A stretch of DNA of 63,498 nucleotides, filler included, from Octopus bimaculoides (Eukaryota), in the NCBI RefSeq assembly GCF_001194135.2. It is 6 parts of 6 records of this genome, joined end to end, with 100 filler letters (N's around TTAATTAATTAA, not from the genome) between each part and the next. Parts side by side here need not be neighbours in the genome. Positions count along the whole stretch, not along the records: positions 50,472 to 59,860 come from NC_068984.1; 5 more parts are not named here. One strand, 5' to 3'. How positions within the stretch are numbered: the stretch's first letter is position 1; every line of letters starts with the position of its first letter. Below the pieces are notes generated by a model. It saw only the letters and a list, made by a program, of their open reading frames with translations, was not told where the DNA came from and ran no database searches. Both the position numbers and the translations under genes were made by a program. This document shows, in pieces, positions 50,166 through 59,860 of the stretch.

Positions 50166-50481
50166 ACAATGTTTTTTTTCTTTTTCGTTTTGTGGGAAAT
50201 GACAGAAAAAAAAAACTACATGAATAAATGTACAGAGAAAAATATTGTAAAATATGTAAATGTGTGGAAATGCGTCAGGCGTGTAATACAATCGAAATAA
50301 TCTGCATAGTTCGAATTAACCCCACCCTCTCTTTCATCGAATTAACCCCCACCCTCTCTTTCATCGAATTANNNNNNNNNNNNNNNNNNNNNNNNNNNNN
50401 NNNNNNNNNNNNNNNTTAATTAATTAANNNNNNNNNNNNNNNNNNNNNNNNNNNNNNNNNNNNNNNNNNNNATATATATAT

Positions 50482-50538
<57 letters not shown>

Positions 50539-50539
50539 C

Positions 50540-50617
<78 letters not shown>

Positions 50618-50830
50618 ATAGATAGAGTTAAACGCAAGTGTTATTCAATGTAATCTCATTTATTTGGTCTCTGAGTTTTTCTTTCCTTTACCCCTCCTCT
50701 TTCTATAGGCTACCTTTGACGTTATATCCTCTAATGTTTTTTTTTTTTAAACTTAATAGCGTTCAGTTCATCACTTTACATATCCATCATATTCTCTTAA
50801 AATGTCTTATTGACGAGTTTTATTTCTTCA

Positions 50831-50914
50831 TTTCCCTGAAGAGAAGATTACAATGTTTTACACCATTTTATTCCTTTGGAATAATACCAATATCTTTGAA
50901 ACATGTGTCGGAAG
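50831..50914 (+). ncRNA. Type I hammerhead ribozyme, intact catalytic core
   Basis: TTTCC-CTGAAGA-GAAGAT..(TATTCC/GGAATA hairpin)..ATCTTT-GAAA-C-ATGT-GTC-GGAAG; predicted cleavage after 50909 (GUC). Confidence 0.8.
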
Positions 50915-51039
50915 TAAAAGAATTTGAATAACACCTGCGTTTAACTCCATTTATTTATTTATATATATTATACAAGATATTTCACCTAAACCCGGAATTT
51001 CTACCTTTAAAAACATTTGACTTGTGTGATCTTTTGCTA

Positions 51040-51250
51040 CCCCGGTAATTGTTTATCGTGAGTACCCCGGACAAAATGCATTGCACCATTTCGTCCGTCT
51101 TTACGTTCTGATTTCGAATTCAGTCGAGGTCGCCTTGGCCTTTCATTCTTTCGGGGACAATAAAATAAGTACCAGTTGAAGACTGGGGTCGATGTAATCG
51201 ACTTAATCCACCCCAACCCACCGGAATTGTTGGCCTTGTGCCAAAATTTT
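51040..51250 (+). mobile_element. SINE family B
   Basis: Family motifs GAGGTCGCCTTGGCCTTTCATTCTTTCGGGG..GTACCAGTTGAAGACTGGGGTCGATG. Confidence 0.8.
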
Positions 51251-54062
51251 TTAGGAAAATATATTGAATTGCGCTATCCAAAATACACTTTATCCGTTAA
51301 GCCGGAGGGATCAGAGAATGTAGTCATTGTTATATAACAAAAGAGATTGCCAAGGTTGGAAGGATTTTATCTTAATTCCCTTGAAACAGCTTTGACTTAT
51401 GGCTAAATAACATCAACAGCAAAATCAGCAATTTTAAAGGTTTCAACCCAACAAGAAATCCTGAAAATCAATGAATCCCAAACTTTGCTCCCTGGCCCTT
51501 TTATCTAACATATTTCGTCGTTTATTTATTAACCCCAAGTCAAAAATATACAGTAAATATTTGTTAGAAATCAAATCTCAAATCACTGCCTAAGCGATAT
51601 CTTTAAGATAGTGAGTTAGCACTAGTATTCAAATAAAATAGAAAATGAATTATAAATACATATTGTACAATCGCTCTACTCGCTCGCATTATAATCTTGG
51701 AGAATATTGCACTACTTAACAATTTACATTGTTCTGTGGTATTATATTTGATACATTAATATTTGTCTATGCACACATACATACAAAAAGCTTGCGCTTA
51801 TATACGTATTTACTTGTATATATAAACATGGGGATGCCTATGTTCATCTGTATATTTACAGTTTTTGGGCGTATGTATCCCTTGCATGCTTACATATTTA
51901 AATACGAACGCGTGCCCGCGCGCACACACATACACACTCACGCATACGCATATGTATATAGGTATGTGTTAATATACGTATGTGTGTATGCACTGCACAC
52001 ACACACATGCATAAATGTATGTGATGGAATAAGGAAAGGTATTGAATATGCTTCACAGTGTATTCATATGTGTGTATGTTTCAACATCTGCAACTGAAAA
52101 AAACGATTCTATATATCGTATATATGCACATGTAATTTGCATGGAAACGCTGAAACTGCTTCCTTCTAATAAATTTATGAATACACGTGTGTATGTATAT
52201 ACGTACGTATATATATATGTATGTTTGTAAGTATGTATGTATGCACACATGAATGCATATATGTATGTATATATGTTTGCAAGTAATTAGGTACATACGT
52301 ACTAAGTATTTAGGAAATATGTATCGCTTATGTAACTCACAAAATATGTTTACTTACATTGAGAATATTTAACAAAATTGAAAAATTTGTGCACAGTCGT
52401 ATATTTATGTCAGTGTTTGTTTAATGGTGTGTGAGTCTACATATTTCATGTAGATGTAAATATGAGCGTGTGAGAGAGAAAAGCCAATGATATTAAGATG
52501 AATTATATTAGTAGCAGCAGGAATATGAAAACTTAGGAGCCAAAGCTGGAAGTCCTTATTCTGTGATTCGACTTAATAAAAATGACAGCCATATTTTCTT
52601 CAAATCCTTTGCTATCTTCAATGTGCAATTGTGAATCCACTGAAATAATGCTTTTGACCATAGCTCTGCCAGTCAGTGTTAAATAAGAAAATCTAAAAGA
52701 CTACAGAGTAAACACTACATGATCAGACGGTACGCATTAACATATATGCAGTATACAATATGAAACACGGGGTAATTCAGGCCAATAACACGACAGCAGT
52801 AACAGTTATATCTAAGTAACTCGTAGCTACTTTATGTCATTCTTATAGGACACTTCCCAATTTTCTATCACCGTCATATTTATGGGCGAGGCGGTAATAA
52901 TTCATGCTTATGCATGTAGAGATACACGTCATTAGAAAATTCACCTGAAATCTCAACTACTAATAAGATATAAATTCCTGGCTTTCGGTAAAAGAAAATA
53001 CAGGAGGATCAGTTAATTATAACTTTATTCCCATCTCAGATTCACACACTTAGTACAGCAGCCCTTCAGTTTTTCTAAGCCCTGTAAAAGAACTTGTCCG
53101 ACCAGGCCTTTCACGATATCCTTAAAGCTAGGAACTTTTCAACACGTTTTAAAAGAGACTTGGATATATTTCCATAATCATAATCTTTCCAAGTTTTAAG
53201 TCAAATATGGTCTCATATGTAAATAAACCTTGAAAACATTCACATAGGAATGCTTCTGATTTAGCAAGGAAGAAGGAAATACGGAAATTGAACCCAGAGC
53301 GTTGAGAATAGAAATAATTGACACAATGTATTTTTCGACATTCTATCGCGTCTACTAGGTTGCCATCCAAACATAGCAAGCAAATAAAAAATATATTATT
53401 TGTTAGTGTTATATAGTAAAAATACAGTAAAACCATGTACTTTGACAACAGGTTTTCACGCTTCTTGATATTATACATACACACAAACACACAAACACCC
53501 ATATACACAAGCTTACATATGTGTATATGTATGTGCATGTGTGTTTGTGTGTGTTTAAGTCAGATAATAAAGGAATGTTACTCCTACTAATGATGCAGAA
53601 TACTCTCTGTCTTATAAAAAGTATACTAGAGTACATTATTTGCTTCTGGGAGACACGATACGTATAATTTCTATAGCTAGCCGCCGAATGGCTCATTCAT
53701 CTTTCTTTAATCATCCTTATGTAATACGTACTTTTCTTCACTCACTCATATACATACGTATATGTATGTATGTATTATGTATATATGTATGTATTCATGC
53801 TTGGTGTTACACTCACGATCTAGCGATCGTGATTTCGATTCCTAGAGCGGGTGGTGCGTTGTGTTCTTGAGGAAAACATTTCATCTAACGTTGCTCTGCG
53901 ATCACTCCGACACCTGACGCGTGGTACACCGGGCACCTGTTCAAACAACATCAATTTGATTGAGAGAGTAATTTAATGTGCGGCACGAACACTTGATCAC
54001 TATAAACAAATCGTTTGTGTAAGCTGAACGCTCGTTCATTATCTTCGACGGGAGAGTCCATC

Positions 54063-54093
<31 letters not shown>

Positions 54094-54438
54094 TGTACGC
54101 ATGTATGTATGTAAATATTTAATCAAGTGAATTATCTGAATAATGAATATAAGTTTTCATGACTGTGGGAATAGTGAATAAGTTCGCTTCACAAATATTG
54201 GATCACATTTTGATGCTACAGTAATTATGGTCAAATCATTTGTTTTTTGTATACCATATCATGAGGTTTCGCTAAAGCATTGTGATTATAATTCGCGACA
54301 CAGAAGGTCTTTGGAAACTTGCTGCGCGGACCATCCTGTAATACATACAAACGCCAAGCTTTGTCACGCACTGACATGTTGAAGGGTCTCTGTAATATTT
54401 ACGCACTTACACGTTAATTTCGAAACCAACAAAGAATT

Positions 54439-54472
<34 letters not shown>

Positions 54473-54622
54473 CTATTGTTTAATGTCTGCTTCTATCTTT
54501 CATTCATTGTCTTTCGGTGTGAATATCTATCTCTTCATCAATCTGCTTATATATATATATTTGACCGTTGACTGGACACTATTCAATTTTTATTCTCCGT
54601 GTTTTTCTCCTTGTCTCCGTAT

Positions 54623-54659
54623 TCTTTCTGTTGAAGAGCGTAGCTCGAAACGTCAAAGA
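54623..54659 (+). ncRNA. Minimal type I hammerhead variant (CUGUUGA core)
   Basis: TCTTT-CTGTTGA-A-GAGC-GTA-GCTC-GAAA-C-GTC-AAAGA: perfect 5-bp stem I, 4-bp stem II, and palindromic ACGT in place of a stem III loop. Confidence 0.7.
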
Positions 54660-54750
54660 CTTACCGTATTCCCGAGCGTCATACTAATACATCCTTTTGT
54701 TATTTACACCACCTGTCCTCGTCTGTTGTTGTTTTTTCGTATATTCTCCC

Positions 54751-54787
<37 letters not shown>

Positions 54788-55195
54788 TATGCTTGTTGTG
54801 CGGCTATATGTGTGTATCTCTGTACGTCTACATTCGTGTGCCTGTATATGTGTCTATGTCTCCGTGTGTGTCTGACATTGTTCCCTTGTTTGTATACACA
54901 CATGCATGCAACATAGATATGTATAGACAAATACCAAAGCAGATATGCATATTCACACATGTACACGCACACACATATTTCTATGTGTAAATCTAAATAC
55001 ATTTTTCGGTGTATGTGTGAGGGAGTAAATCTATGTGTCTGGTTGTGTGTACATAACAAACCTACAGTACCTCCAACTACCAACCCCGTACGACAAAAAT
55101 ATGCTTAAAAAAACAACAAGAAGGTAAGGAAATTTTAGTATTAGTCTAAATTTAGCTGGGAGAATTGTTACTAAAACTATCTTTTCTATTTTCAG

Positions 55196-55328
55196 TGTTT
55201 GTTGAGTCAGAATTTTCCGGTTCAGCACCAGCAGATGGACTTGACAAATATTGTTCCATACCTCAACACACTTGCTCTGCTTTCAGCAAACAATTGCACT
55301 CTTTCACAACAAATATAAAAATTCCAAG
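55196..55328 (+). CDS. Candidate exon after a 72-nt intron-like segment
   Basis: AAG|gtaagg (55124) ... tcttttctattttcag (55195); open in phase 1 (FVESEFSGSAP..IKIPR); downstream donor gtcata is weak; no homology recognised. Confidence 0.3.
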
Positions 55329-56741
55329 GTCATATTTGGACGACAAATTCTACAATTTTGTTTATTATTTATATTTCGGCACTCAAAATATTTGCGTTTG
55401 TGTTGCTGTGTGAAGGAGTATTTGTGTATATGATGTGTTTGTGTGCTTTTTTTCCGTTCACATGCGAATGTATACAGATTCTTCCGTGTAGTTAAGCATG
55501 CTATACATACATATATACAGACATACATACATACATACATACATAATACTTACATACATACATACGTACATACATACATACATATATGCATGCATACATA
55601 CATACATACATACACACACACATACATACACACATACATACAAACAAACTCATAGGCATTCGTTGATACAGATGCGCACACACGTATGTGTCTGGCTCTG
55701 TGTGTCTGTGTGTAAGTTAACCGAAGCAGCATTAATTGAAAAATATAATATACTATATAATTGTACATATATACTATACAATAGTAAACGCGCGCGCGCG
55801 TGTGTATGACCAGTAAGAAGAAAGGGGAAAACCTTAAATAACAATAACAAGCAAATTTTTTTACTGAAACGTGCAACCAAAATTTATCTCAGAACGTCAC
55901 AGTCTATTGAATTGATACTCTACTCCACACGTTGTTGCTATTATATCTATTATTACGACGGGTATATTTTCATCCACAGATGTTCCCGATGAAATCTAAA
56001 CGAAAGTAATGATTATAAGCATAATATTGCAGTTCATGTGATTCGGTATCTTATCTTTTGCTTGAAGTTACCAACCTTCTAAATAATTGCTTCTACGAGT
56101 CAACGAGGAAGTCTCTAAGTGAGCCGACACCGACAGCGTCTAAGTGATAACACATCCTGCTAAATGTAACAGCTACATCGCCTTCAAATCACACTCTTCT
56201 TTCTAAAAAAGGAAGTTCACAACATTTCCTTCAATATTTACTGAAACAGATGCAAAGACGTCCGTATAGTCACTGATCAGTAGCTTCAATATCTTGATCA
56301 TACTACTGTCGGAAAGAGCTGACCTGCGGCTAAGTAACAATCATTACAACTTCAATATTACCTAAAGCAAAACTTTCTTGAGACAACATGGAAGCTACAA
56401 AAACCTGTGACAATAAATAAAATATGTTAAAATAAAAAGATGGACACTATAGCGATAGTTCACGTATGTAATACAATGAGCCACAAAGATTCGATCACAT
56501 GAGATTATCCACGGAATTAATAGATAAAATCCTATTTTAGATCTATTTAAGATTTAAGATTAGCAACCAAAGGAGATAACTCCACATGAACATCTGCACG
56601 TAATTTAGACAGTATAGATTAAATTGGATGTGGCTCTTAAATGCCAACTAGTATCAGCAACAGACATATTTTGAGGCTATTAGACTTCGTCAGCGACATA
56701 TATTCTATTCTGTTGGTAAGACTAAGACATACAATATATAC

Positions 56742-56774
<33 letters not shown>

Positions 56775-58523
56775 AAACAACAAATTACTAAGAGAAATAA
56801 CTCAGAGTAGCTAGTGACGTGTATATCAAAAACAGACAAATTGAATATTATATAACATCAATTCATTTATTTCCGATTCTATTATAATTAAGATCAACTC
56901 CATATTAAAAAGGGATACAATCTCAAGAATTCTTCAGACTTGACTGGCTTAAATGTTAAGATTCTCACATTAGTACTACAGTTATAATTCAGTTAAAGCA
57001 ATTTTTATTAAATAAAGTTCTGCATCATTCGGCTCTAGGAAAGCCTTTCTAATGCTTACAAGGTTTAAGCAATATTAGACAATGTTTAAGAAAAGGATGT
57101 TTGTACTCGAAGGTATAAATATATAGAGCCATTATCAAGCTAATTATTGAAGAATATTTCAAAGGAGAGGAGTCCAAAACCAAAATAACCACCACATACA
57201 ATCAAGTAAAGAATCATAGGGAAATTTATACTATATGTTAATGGATCTATGAAATGCAATTCATGCATAGATGAAACATCGCATTTTCTTTTTACATATA
57301 AGAATTTCACCGCACTACTGATTCCAGATCCGAAATTTTCAGCAAATGCAAACATATGGGCAAATTTCTTAAGGCGAATTAAAATTTATCTCTCACTGGA
57401 CGGAGTATTTTTTGTTGCTGTTACCTTAAGGGAACAGTAAACTCTCCCCCTCTCTCTTTTTACATATATATATANNNNNNNNNNNNNNNNNNNNNNNNNN
57501 NNNNNNNNNNNNNNNNNNNNNNNNNNNNNNNNNNNNNNNNNNNNNNNNNNNNNNNNNNNNNNNNNNNNNNNNNNNNNNNNNNNNNNNNNNNNNNNNNNNN
57601 NNNNNNNNNNNNNNNNNNNNNNNNNNNNNNNNNNNNNNNNNNNNNNNNNNNNNNNNNNNNNNNNNNNNNNNNNNNNNNNNNNNNNNNNNNNNNNNNNNNN
57701 NNNNNNNNNNNNNNNNNNNNNNNNNNNNNNNNNNNNNNNNNNNNNNNNNNNNNNNNNNNNNNNNNNNNNNNNNNNNNNNNNNNNNNNNNNNNNNNNNNNN
57801 NNNNNNNNNNNNNNNNNNNNNNTGTATCTATATTTATGTGTTTGTCTCTGTCCCCAACATTGCTTGACAATCGATGTTGGTGTGTTTACGTCCCCATAAC
57901 CTAGCGCTTCGGTAAAAAAAAAGATCGATAGAATAAGTCCTAAGTTAGATTTTTTCGACTAAAAATCCTTCAAGGTATGGTTCCAGCACGACCGTAGTCA
58001 AATGATTGAAACAAGTAAAAGAATAAGAGAATATATATATTCATACATACATATGTATACATATAAATTTGACATGGACGATTCTTTCTTGTCTTGGGAT
58101 TCACGGTCAAACGGCTGGGTGGAATTGCGCGAAAAATTACAAAGATGTGTAGAATGATCCGGTGGTGATGCTGGGCTTTGTATTTTTTCATAGCTGCCAT
58201 GGGTACCGAGATAATCTACTATAATAATACTCGTGTTTATGAAGAAGAAAGGAAAGGGTGATAGATGAATAAGGAAGAAAGGGGTGATGTCATACTTGGT
58301 AGTCGGATGATGAAAATTGTACGATGAAAAAATAAATCAAACAGCGTTTCAACTCTGTGTGAATATATGTGTGTGTGTGTAAAAGGAAGGTGTGTGAATC
58401 TGTGTGTGTGTGTGTGTGTGCGCGCGCGCGCGCGCAATGGATGTGGGATGGATCATCTTTGTCCGCTTAGTATTTGGGTTTATCTTTTGATTTGGTTGAA
58501 TCTTAGTCGGTTTGTTTTGTTAG

Positions 58524-58998
58524 TGTTATATCGCACGTTCGATGACCTCTACACAACTACTCCGACGTCTAGACTTCTCCCTCTATATCTATGTATTGGG
58601 CTAGCCTACTTCATCGTCTGGAGGCGTCGACACAACACCTACCCCTTTTGAGTTTTTTAAACCTGAATTTATCAATTTCATTTCCTCGGTGCGAAACTAG
58701 CATATCTTTTTCTGTTAGCGTTGATTTCCATCATTTCTGTAGGTTTTCTCTTCCTGTTCGACCTACGTCTCGGTTCTGCTTTCAGTAACTCTTCCATTTC
58801 GGTACTATTCAAAATCCTCGTCGCCACTGTTGTATCGCAGTACTAAACAGTGGCTGCGTGAGCTACGAAATCTTCGTCGCCACTGTTATATCGCACGTTC
58901 AGATGACCTTTACTCAACTACTCCGACGTCTAGACTTCTCCCTCTATATCTACGTATTGGGCTAGACTACTTCATCGTCTTGGGGCGTCGACACAACA
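58524..58998 (-). mobile_element. TRIM-like miniature non-autonomous LTR retroelement (Gypsy-derived)
   Basis: Direct repeats 58524-58637 and 58884-58998 bounded by TGTT..AACA. On the minus strand, PBS TGGCGACGAAGAT lies 1 nt from the 5' LTR and PPT AAAAGGGGTAGG abuts the 3' LTR. Confidence 0.88.
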
Positions 58999-58999
58999 G

Positions 59000-59135
59000 C
59001 TGGTCAGTTATATTTAGCGTTTTGACAGAAAAAATGTCGTTCAAAAATTGCTTCTTAACGTAAGATACTTACACAGAGCAGGTTTTACAGTCACATCATC
59101 CAAACCGACCGGGTGAAACCGGCCTTAGCTGCTAG
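59000..59135 (+). mobile_element. Possible Helitron 3' terminus
   Basis: GC hairpin GACCGG-GTGAAA-CCGGCC about 7 nt upstream of CTAG followed by T; no 5' end identified. Confidence 0.45.
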
Positions 59136-59823
59136 TATATATATATTTCTGCAGCACTTTTTCTTGATGCTGGAAGAAGGAAGAGTAAAGATAGCTGTGA
59201 TGAGATTTTGTCACTCCATCGTCTATGTTTTTTAAAAACTATAACAGTGAGTTTCGAAAATAGGTTTTACGAAAGAATATATGCAAGCATGAAACATTGT
59301 ACTTATTTACACCCTTCATTACTATCTCCATAAACTCTCTGATGTTGGAAACAATAATTTGAATATCTATCTTAAGAATATTTGCAAAAGTTGGTTATAT
59401 TACCGTAGAGTGTTTCAGTTATGACAGAAACATAACTAAAGATTGAGTCACGTACATATATTTGAGTTGCATTTTCTACAGACAGTACTTCTTTCTAATG
59501 AAGTTATGATTAGTAAAATAACCATTCCAATGCAACAGACAACCGAGCAAGTACGCGTAAAATGTTCCTATAGAATGTTCCTATACAAAAAATTCAGATA
59601 ACATAACAACTAGACAGAACATACATGTGACGTCCATACATACATACATACATACATACATGAATACAAACATACATCCGCAAACATTTATGATAGTCTT
59701 AGAACAAAGGAAACTTGTAATCACATAAGTATGCTTTATATATTTTACAAATTAATACATGTGTATGTGTATACTATTATATGAATGTACATGTATGCAT
59801 TATTATCATCATCATCATCATCA

Positions 59824-59860
<37 letters not shown>

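What the first reader, a model, noticed from the sequence alone, without database searches (positions are those of the whole stretch)
58524..58998. Complete miniature LTR retroelement (TRIM-like) with tRNA-Ser PBS, PPT and a 39-aa gag/integrase fusion ORF
Seen: 114/115-bp LTRs starting TGTT and ending AACA, a 246-bp interior, a PPT abutting one LTR and a PBS 1 nt from the other. The internal PBS copy (58814-58826, ATCCTCGTCGCCA) matches the 3' end of metazoan tRNA-Ser(GCT) as I recall it, a primer used by Gypsy elements such as the Mag clade. The interior encodes MEELLKAEPRRRSNRKRKPTEMMEINANRKRYASFAPRK* (58797-58678, minus). RRSNRKRKP resembles the RRS-x-R-x-R-x-P tail of Gypsy integrases. Inference: this is an internally deleted Gypsy that keeps every cis signal needed for mobilisation in trans. 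TRIMs are well known in plants but reported in few animals, and I know of none from cephalopods. The flanks gttag/gctgg are only a 3/5 TSD match.
Basis: partly seen in the sequence, partly recalled or inferred. Interest (0 to 1): 0.75.

Follow-up and report, generated by a model that had tools for sequence, protein, structure and literature searches.

The report
Old miniature LTR retroelement copy
This is a real but decayed 475-bp copy of a protein-less LTR retrotransposon that still shows its tRNA-Ser primer site and polypurine tract. That is an ordinary kind of genomic parasite relic, and its claimed "gag/integrase" mini-gene has no support.

Summary
The structure is in the sequence as described. 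Two direct repeats of 114 and 115 bp (58524-58637 and 58884-58998) are 94% identical, carry TG..CA ends and 8/10 terminal inverted repeats, and enclose a 246-bp interior. The sense strand is minus. A PBS lies 1 nt after the 5' LTR, and a purine tract AAAAGGGGTAGG abuts the 3' LTR. Both PBS copies match 11/11 nt of the 3' ends of published vertebrate tRNA-Ser(GCT) isodecoders and no other tRNA compared. It is therefore an LTR retroelement with TRIM-like architecture.

Several claims are not supported:
- The 39-aa ORF has no relative in Pfam, PDB, 5.8 billion proteins or 1.84 billion representatives. An ORF that long arises in 10% of shuffles.
- No target-site duplication exists at any boundary shift.
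- The Gypsy/Mag origin is compatible with the data but not diagnostic.

Family status, meaning copy number and an autonomous partner, could not be tested. The host tRNA set and the host identity are also unverified.

An unexplained second U5-end/PBS copy and an inverted 9-mer sit in the leader.

Verdict: an ordinary, old, probably inert non-autonomous LTR element. Interest is low to moderate.

The parts
58884..58998 (-). 5' LTR (115 bp; sense strand is minus). Reads TGTTGTGTCG...CGATATAACA. Contains CCAAT (58960-58956), TATA-like GATATAG (58950-58944) and the poly(A)-like hexamer AGTAAA (58914-58909).
   Evidence: Direct repeat with 58524-58637, 94% identical. The promoter and poly(A) roles are inferred only.
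58870..58882 (-). PBS1, TGGCGACGAAGAT, 1 nt (G, 58883) downstream of the 5' LTR.
   Evidence: Its complement CTTCGTCGCCA equals 11/11 nt of the 3' end of mouse tRNA-Ser-GCT (PMC11551137). Motif expectation is 0.08.
58846..58854 (-). Inverted 9-mer GCCACTGTT, a perfect complement of the LTR-end/PBS junction AACAGTGGC. It could form a hairpin with either junction.
   Evidence: A perfect 9-nt inverted repeat with a loop of 60 nt or less occurs in 87/5000 shuffles.
58814..58839 (-). Second copy of the U5 end (TGCGATACAACA, 58839-58828) + G + PBS2 (TGGCGACGAGGAT, 58826-58814). With the two following T (58813-58812) it forms the 28-nt repeat, 26/28 identical to the real junction. TAGTAC flanks it on both sides (58845-58840 and 58807-58802).
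   Evidence: (family D5). The PBS2 complement CCTCGTCGCCA equals 11/11 nt of human tRNA-Ser-GCT-1-1 (PMC10359600).
58678..58797 (-). 39-aa ATG ORF (MEELLKAEPRRRSNRKRKPTEMMEINANRKRYASFAPRK*), most likely fortuitous.
   Evidence: It has no homologue or domain. Its length is reached in 9.9% of shuffles.
58638..58649 (-). Polypurine tract AAAAGGGGTAGG abutting the 3' LTR. The wider 21-nt tract 58658-58638 has 17 purines.
58524..58637 (-). 3' LTR (114 bp). The AGTAAA position reads TGTAGA here (58553-58548).
58519..58523 (.). Flank gttag (+ strand). The expected TSD partner is not matched.
   Evidence: 3/5 against gctgg, and no perfect TSD at any shift.
58999..59003 (.). Flank gctgg (+ strand). The expected TSD partner is not matched.

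Best explanation
This is a copy of a miniature, protein-less LTR retrotransposon with TRIM-type architecture, lying on the minus strand. I infer that it arrived as a short element.

Inferred mechanism:
1. A short RNA was transcribed from the LTR promoter.
2. It was packaged by the Gag of an autonomous LTR retrotransposon.
3. Host tRNA-Ser(GCT) annealed to the PBS next to the 5' LTR and primed minus-strand DNA.
4. The purine tract next to the 3' LTR primed plus-strand DNA.
5. The partner's integrase inserted the TG..CA-ended DNA.

Shown: the LTR pair, the TG..CA ends with 8/10 terminal inverted repeats, the position and tRNA-Ser(GCT) match of the PBS, the PPT, and the absence of any recognisable coding capacity.

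Inferred: mobilisation in trans, the identity of the partner (a short-LTR Ty3/gypsy such as the Mag lineage is compatible), and the promoter and poly(A) assignments.

This copy is old, with 5.3% LTR divergence. It has no target-site duplication and carries a rearranged leader with a second U5-end/PBS copy plus an inverted 9-mer. That leader looks like a template-switch product of reverse transcription. The copy is probably immobile now.

I put about 0.9 on 'LTR-retroelement derived'. I put about 0.55 on 'the short form itself was what integrated', which is the confidence given for this explanation as a whole. I put about 0.4 on 'member of a multi-copy family of this structure'.
For: - The LTR pair is far beyond chance.
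- PBS1 starts 1 nt after the LTR. Both PBS copies match 11/11 nt of published tRNA-Ser(GCT) 3' ends, against 5 nt or fewer for the 12 other human tRNAs compared. My estimate of the chance of such a match at that position is about 7e-5.
- The PBS motif has an expectation of 0.08 in the whole window.
- The PPT, with its G-run, abuts the 3' LTR.
- Size and parts fit the published TRIM definition: under 1 kb, terminal repeats of 100-250 bp, PBS, PPT, no protein (PMC6934838; PMC10886601).
- There is no coding signal.
- The leader rearrangement is bounded by TAGTAC microhomology and duplicates exactly the U5-end/PBS junction, that is, the 3' end of plus-strand strong-stop DNA. That fits an error made during reverse transcription.
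Against: - There is no TSD. The flanks match 3/5, and no perfect 4-6 bp match exists at any shift. With 5.3% divergence, two changes in 5 bp are expected only about 2% of the time.
- No second copy was found anywhere. The 9.4-kb piece has none. Metagenome, viral and prokaryote-genome scans gave 0 hits. Translated LTR and ORF searches were empty. These collections probably do not hold the host genome, so this is absence of data rather than absence of copies.
- The host tRNA-Ser sequence is unknown.
- The 3' LTR lacks the only poly(A)-like hexamer.
- The interior RNA is not unusually structured (z = -1.1), so no packaging signal is evident.
Confidence: 0.55

Rival explanations
1. It is a one-off internally deleted derivative. 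A full-length autonomous LTR retrotransposon, of Gypsy or another superfamily, either inserted here and later lost about 4-5 kb of interior by genomic deletion, or lost it in the single reverse-transcription cycle that made this copy. On this reading there is no family of this short structure.
For: No other copy of the short form was found. The 5.3% LTR divergence and the scrambled leader show a decayed, rearranged element. Deletion derivatives of LTR elements are common (PMC3286476).
Against: The deletion would have had to spare exactly the PBS leader and the PPT-proximal end, which TRIM families keep by selection. An in-situ deletion should leave the TSD intact, and there is none. No residual gag or pol similarity was found in any frame of the interior. 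The searches that found no copies could not have seen the host genome.
Confidence: 0.3
2. It is a recombinant or chimera of two related copies. Unequal or ectopic recombination between two elements of the same family at different loci joined a 5' part and a 3' part. That would explain the unmatched flanks, and possibly the double U5-end/PBS.
For: An otherwise complete LTR-PBS-PPT-LTR structure without a TSD is the classical signature of inter-element recombination. This is established knowledge of LTR retrotransposons. One search shows there is no TSD. The two U5-end/PBS copies differ by 2/28, about the same as the LTRs.
Against: The 28-nt spacer after PBS1 is unlike both the LTR and the sequence after PBS2. 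Simple crossover between two identical-structure copies therefore does not produce the leader seen. The left flank is T/G-rich low-complexity DNA, where TSD decay by slippage is also plausible.
Confidence: 0.2
3. It is not a retroelement. A local 360-bp tandem or segmental duplication (1.3 units) happens to carry PBS-like and PPT-like strings.
For: LTR-int-LTR is formally 1.3 copies of a 360-bp unit (spacing 360/361). LTR_STRUC-type false positives of this sort are common (PMC3286476). There is no TSD.
Against: The repeat ends precisely at TG and CA with 8/10 terminal inverted repeats. An 11-nt exact tRNA-Ser(GCT) 3'-end complement begins with TGG 1 nt from one repeat. A G-run purine tract touches the other repeat, on the same strand and in the right order. 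Tandem Repeats Finder reports no array there.
Confidence: 0.03
4. The 39-aa ORF is a functional remnant, a gag N-terminus fused in frame to an integrase C-terminal tail, and it contributes to mobilisation.
For: The ORF starts 16 nt after PBS2 and stops 28 nt before the PPT, where gag start and pol stop would lie. It is basic and purine-rich like many Gag and IN tails. That comparison rests on my own knowledge and was not tested.
Against: No homologue was found in 5.8 billion proteins or in 1.84 billion representatives read exhaustively. There is no Pfam family at E <= 1 and no meaningful PDB match (best E = 0.43). Its length is reached in 9.9% of sense-strand shuffles. The first in-frame start is a GTG inside PBS2.
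Confidence: 0.03

Closest known systems
[quoted passage not shown]
   Same: Total length is under 1 kb (475 bp). Terminal direct repeats fall in the 100-250 bp range. A PBS follows the 5' repeat and a PPT precedes the 3' repeat. There is no protein of its own.
   Different: No TSD is present. Copy number and conservation of the structure are unknown. The PBS is of tRNA-Ser(GCT) type, whereas plant TRIMs typically use tRNA-Met (my own knowledge) and biv-TRIM has no canonical PBS. The leader carries a duplicated U5-end/PBS. No sequence comparison to these families could be run here.
Mag lineage of Ty3/gypsy (Bombyx mag; Culex cqgypsy families, PMC3286476)
   Same: LTRs are short (119-304 bp in Culex), the PBS is mostly tRNA-Ser or tRNA-Leu, and ends are TG..CA. 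This makes the lineage a plausible autonomous partner or ancestor.
   Different: Mag elements are 4-10 kb and encode gag and pol, while nothing here is recognisably coding. Mag makes 5-bp TSDs and none is present here. A tRNA-Ser PBS is shared with 17.6-group errantiviruses and other clades, so it does not assign the clade.
Non-autonomous LTR elements without a known master copy (cqUNK families of Culex, PMC3286476) and SMART small LTR retrotransposons (292 bp, cited in PMC10886601)
   Same: They have LTRs, a sharply defined PBS and no coding capacity. No relatable autonomous element is known for them.
   Different: The Culex elements are 1.6-14 kb, carry internal tandem repeats and have LTRs more than 98% identical. 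This copy is 475 bp, has no internal tandem array and has 94% identical LTRs.
TRIMp3 elements (Cassandra, Helenus, Ajax; PMC10886601)
   Same: They have TRIM size and layout. Animal and molluscan members exist.
   Different: Their LTRs contain a tRNA- or 5S-rRNA-derived Pol III promoter. Here ARAGORN and Rfam find no small-RNA-like sequence in the LTRs.
cqgypsy_1 of Culex (Osvaldo lineage) with an atypical PBS region
   Same: The region just downstream of the 5' LTR is rearranged and includes a direct duplication of the LTR end (26 nt there, 12 nt here) next to tRNA-related sequence.
   Different: In cqgypsy_1 a 149-bp head-to-head tRNA dimer replaces the PBS. Here two ordinary 13-nt PBS copies are separated by 28 nt + 12 nt.

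Membership tests
LTR retrotransposon (any superfamily) | Two long terminal direct repeats ending TG...CA with short terminal inverted repeats | tested here: met
   LTRs of 114 and 115 bp are 94% identical and read TGTTGTGTCG...CGATATAACA, with 8/10 terminal inverted repeats.
LTR retrotransposon (any superfamily) | PBS complementary to the 3' end of a tRNA, within a few nt of the 5' LTR | tested here: met
   PBS1 lies 1 nt from the LTR and matches 11/11 nt of a published vertebrate tRNA-Ser(GCT) 3' end. Other tRNAs match 5 nt or fewer. The host's own tRNA was not available.
LTR retrotransposon (any superfamily) | Polypurine tract immediately upstream of the 3' LTR | tested here: met
   AAAAGGGGTAGG at 58649-58638 has 11/12 purines and abuts the LTR.
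LTR retrotransposon (any superfamily) | 4-6 bp target-site duplication | tested here: not met
   The flanks match 3/5, and no perfect 4-6 bp TSD exists at boundary shifts of +-3.
TRIM | Total length under 1 kb with terminal repeats of about 100-250 bp and a short interior | tested here: met
   475 bp in total, with 114/115-bp repeats and a 246-bp interior. Definition from PMC6934838 and PMC10886601.
TRIM | No coding capacity for mobilisation proteins | tested here: met
   There is no Pfam hit in the three sense frames and no homologue of the only ORF.
TRIM | Multi-copy family with the same short structure, dispersed, each copy with its own TSD | not testable with these tools
The host genome is absent from the searchable collections. 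No second copy lies in the 9.4-kb piece.
TRIM | Autonomous partner sharing LTR, PBS or PPT sequence | not testable with these tools
   There is no host assembly to search. Translated LTR and ORF searches were empty.
Ty3/gypsy, Mag lineage (derivative of) | RT/IN phylogeny placing pol in the Mag clade, or LTR or leader identity to a Mag element | not testable with these tools
   No pol remnant is present and no candidate parent was retrieved.
Ty3/gypsy, Mag lineage (derivative of) | Short LTRs and a tRNA-Ser or tRNA-Leu PBS (typical of the lineage, not exclusive to it) | tested here: met
   The LTR is 115 bp and the PBS is of Ser(GCT) type. Culex Mag families have 119-304 bp LTRs and Ser or Leu PBS. 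A Ser PBS also occurs in errantiviruses.
TRIMp3 (Cassandra/Helenus/Ajax) | tRNA- or 5S-rRNA-derived Pol III promoter inside the LTR | tested here: not met
   ARAGORN finds 0 genes, and Rfam at E <= 1 has no hit within 58524-58998.

The most novel reading that the evidence does not exclude
The copy belongs to a dispersed, multi-copy TRIM family of a cephalopod genome. That would be the first such family described for the class. It would be primed by tRNA-Ser(GCT) and mobilised by a short-LTR Mag-like Ty3/gypsy. The duplicated U5-end/PBS plus inverted junction 9-mer would be a conserved family feature, such as a structured initiation site or two alternative primer sites for two tRNA-Ser isodecoders, rather than a private scar.
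Probability: 0.3. Interest if true: 0.4.

Novelty: new member of a known kind. Interest (0 to 1): 0.25.

Why it matters
If a whole family exists, it would add cephalopods to the short list of animal groups with TRIMs: hymenopterans, taeniid cestodes and bivalves (PMC10886601). It would also give an unusually clear animal TRIM with a canonical tRNA-Ser PBS, useful for finding its autonomous partner and for dating bursts. As a single old copy it has only annotation value. It should be masked as an LTR-derived repeat, and its ORF should not be called a gene.

Tried and rejected
Copy number, expression, small RNAs and empty alleles therefore could not be examined, and read laying was not attempted.
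- Family search through proteins: the interior ORF and a profile of the open antisense translation of both LTRs found nothing among 5.8 billion proteins. An exhaustive HMMER run over 1.84 billion representatives with the ORF gave 0 hits.
- Exact look-ups: the two LTR-spanning ORFs and ten other ORFs of the piece are not in the collection, so the host genome is evidently not held.
- DNA pattern scans: the most conserved LTR 23-mer and the U5-end/PBS 25-mer gave 0 hits in metagenome, viral and prokaryotic genome contigs.
- Host identification: a search with an ORF from the interspersed-repeat-like block at about 51037-51260 and a literature string search found nothing relevant.
- Collapsed array or nested LTR: I rejected this for the leader, because the spacer is not LTR-like (918/2000 shuffles score as well).
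- Extended tRNA T-loop complementarity next to both PBS copies: I rejected this as evidence, because it needs a 5-nt skip and is not significant.
- RNA folding of the interior and of the whole element gave z of about -1.1, which is nothing notable.
I did not paste the X-substituted frames, so the upstream 7 kb was not profile-searched. By eye its ORFs are microsatellite translations.
- Supplementary PBS tables of the eLife errantivirus paper are not held.

Full report
**Observation**

The piece (50472-59860) is AT-rich, microsatellite-laden eukaryotic DNA. At 58524-58998 there are two direct repeats, 58524-58637 (114 bp) and 58884-58998 (115 bp). They differ by six substitutions and one single-base indel (p = 5.3%, JC 0.055). 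They are the only matches to each other in the piece (blastn E = 1e-46, nhmmer E = 5e-27). A 23-mer from them has zero chance matches in 100 shuffles.

Read on the minus strand, which is the sense strand, each repeat is TGTTGTGTCG...CGATATAACA. That gives TG..CA ends with 8/10 terminal inverted repeats. Similarity stops exactly at these ends on all four sides, so the boundaries are firm.

**Cis signals**

One nucleotide after the 5' LTR comes TGGCGACGAAGAT (PBS1, 58882-58870). Immediately before the 3' LTR comes AAAAGGGGTAGG (58649-58638), which has 11/12 purines and a G-run. TGGCGACGARG with up to one mismatch occurs only twice in the window, against 0.08 expected. Both occurrences are in this element.

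I could not obtain the host's tRNAs, so I used published sequences. Human tRNA-Ser-GCT-1-1 ends ...CCCACCCTCGTCGCCA (PMC10359600). A mouse tRNA-Ser-GCT isodecoder ends ...CCCACCTTCGTCGCCA (PMC11551137). PBS1 is an exact 11-nt complement of the mouse form. The internal copy PBS2 (58826-58814) is an exact 11-nt complement of the human form. Twelve other human tRNAs, including the three other serine isoacceptors, match 5 terminal nt or fewer.

My estimate of the chance of an 11-nt match to any of about 50 tRNA 3' ends within 6 nt of a repeat end is about 7e-5. Together with the TG..CA ends and the PPT on the same strand and in the correct order, this makes an LTR-retroelement origin very likely (about 0.9). 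The 'fortuitous tandem duplication' rival becomes very unlikely.

**What is not there**

There is no target-site duplication. The flanks are gttag/gctgg (3/5), and no perfect 4-6 bp match exists for any boundary shift of +-3. At 5.3% divergence, two changes in five positions are expected only about 2% of the time, while a 3/5 match is what random flanks give about 9-10% of the time. The data therefore mildly favour 'no TSD' over 'decayed TSD'. The usual explanation is recombination between two copies. Slippage in the T/G-rich left flank is an alternative.

The 39-aa ORF (58797-58678) is real as a string, but nothing supports it as a gene:
- It has no word-sharing candidate among 5.8 billion proteins.
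- It has no hit at E <= 0.001 in an exhaustive HMMER pass over 1.84 billion representatives.
- It has no Pfam family at E <= 1.
- Its best PDB match has E = 0.43, to an unrelated yeast ribosomal protein.
- An ATG ORF this long appears in 9.9% of sense-strand shuffles of the purine-rich interior, and in 26% of 246-bp windows of the piece on either strand.

The 'RRS-x-R-x-R-x-P integrase tail' resemblance therefore remains an untested recollection.

**LTR content (inference only)**

The LTR carries CCAAT (58960-58956), a TATA-like GATATAG (58950-58944) and a variant poly(A) hexamer AGTAAA (58914-58909). In the 3' LTR that hexamer reads TGTAGA (58553-58548), and two of the six substitutions fall in it. 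No tRNA- or 5S-like segment is present in the LTRs, so the element is not of the Cassandra/Helenus/Ajax (TRIMp3) type. The interior RNA is not unusually stable (z = -1.1).

**An unexplained leader**

The junction 'LTR end + G + PBS' occurs three times:
- the genuine junction at 58887-58870;
- a perfect inverted 9-mer GCCACTGTT (58854-58846);
- a second direct copy comprising the last 12 nt of the LTR (one change), G and PBS2 (58839-58814). With the two following T it makes a 28-nt repeat that is 26/28 identical to the first.

A perfect 9-nt inverted repeat with a loop of 60 nt or less arises in 1.7% of shuffles. The 28-nt spacer is not LTR-like, and it differs from what follows PBS2. This rules out a simple tandem duplication and a collapsed LTR-int-LTR-int-LTR array.

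The second copy is bracketed by TAGTAC on both sides (58845-58840 and 58807-58802). It duplicates exactly the 3' end of plus-strand strong-stop DNA. That pattern fits microhomology-guided template switching during reverse transcription, which is an inference.

The single PBS difference (A/G) sits at the position where the mouse and human tRNA-Ser(GCT) isodecoders differ. It may be a plain transition, or it may reflect copying from two isodecoders. I cannot tell which. A Culex Osvaldo-like element with a duplicated LTR end next to tRNA-derived sequence is a loose precedent (PMC3286476).

**Mechanism**

The best reading is a non-autonomous LTR element. It would be transcribed from its LTR, packaged and reverse-transcribed by a partner's proteins, primed by tRNA-Ser(GCT) and the PPT, and integrated through its TG..CA ends. 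Only the anatomy is shown, and every step of mobilisation is inferred.

The copy is old. With assumed neutral rates of 2-5e-9 per site per year, K = 0.055 gives very roughly 5-14 million years. That rate is an assumption and was not measured for this host. The copy is probably inert.

**Family and clade**

The layout meets the structural definition of a TRIM: under 1 kb, terminal repeats of 100-250 bp, PBS, PPT and no protein (PMC6934838, PMC10886601). The defining population feature could not be tested. That feature is many dispersed copies of the same short structure, each with its own TSD, plus an autonomous partner.
- Exact look-ups show that the host's ORFs are not in the protein collection.
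- All DNA pattern scans of public collections were empty.

These negatives say nothing about copy number in the host. A one-off deletion derivative therefore remains a serious rival (about 0.3).

The Gypsy/Mag attribution is compatible with the data. Culex Mag families have 119-304 bp LTRs, mostly tRNA-Ser PBS and 5-bp TSDs. It is not diagnostic, because tRNA-Ser also primes 17.6-group errantiviruses and other Ty3/gypsy clades, and no pol remnant exists to place.

**Novelty**

Animal TRIMs are already described in hymenopterans, taeniid cestodes and bivalves, with further Repbase entries in fish and oyster. The held literature has no paper that describes a TRIM in cephalopods. However, I could not verify that the host is a cephalopod.

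At best this is a new member of a known kind, and as a single decayed copy it is ordinary. I score interest at 0.25. The most novel reading still open is a cephalopod TRIM family with a conserved dual tRNA-Ser PBS. I give it about 0.3 probability and 0.4 interest if true.

Noticed in passing
window 58812-58887 (minus strand): The LTR-end/PBS junction is present three times in the leader. It occurs twice in direct orientation (26/28 identical) and once as a perfect inverted 9-mer, GCCACTGTT at 58854-58846. The second direct copy is bracketed by TAGTAC. The two PBS copies differ at the same position at which mouse and human tRNA-Ser(GCT) isodecoders differ.
   Followed up: partly
window 58909-58914 vs 58548-58553: The only poly(A)-like hexamer of the LTR, AGTAAA, is intact in the 5' LTR but reads TGTAGA in the 3' LTR. 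Two of the six LTR substitutions fall in this hexamer.
   Followed up: no
window 58356-58436: An alternating purine-pyrimidine run, (TG)n followed by (CG)n, of the Z-DNA-prone type, lies about 90 bp from the element's 3' LTR. A sub-threshold Rfam SCARNA7 hit over it (58279-58460, 29.7 bits against a gathering score of 65) is a low-complexity artefact.
   Followed up: no
window 50474-50626, 52176-52276, 54064-54113, 55503-55646, 59635-59677, 59799-59860: There are dense tetra- and trinucleotide microsatellites, including (ATAG)38, (ATAC)36, (TATG)n, (CATA)n and (ATT)20. The sub-threshold Rfam 'mir-297', 'mir-3149' and 'mir-1277' hits checked against these arrays fall on them or on similar TA/CA-rich low-complexity runs. 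All those hits are far below gathering scores.
   Followed up: partly
window 51037-51260: This non-low-complexity block looks like an interspersed repeat. From my own recollection it resembles SINE-like repeats common in cephalopod genomes. ARAGORN and Rfam find no tRNA in it, and a protein-word search with its ORF found nothing.
   Followed up: partly
window 57475-57822: An assembly gap of 348 N lies 700 bp from the element. The source is therefore a scaffolded draft, and local mis-joins near repeats cannot be excluded.
   Followed up: no
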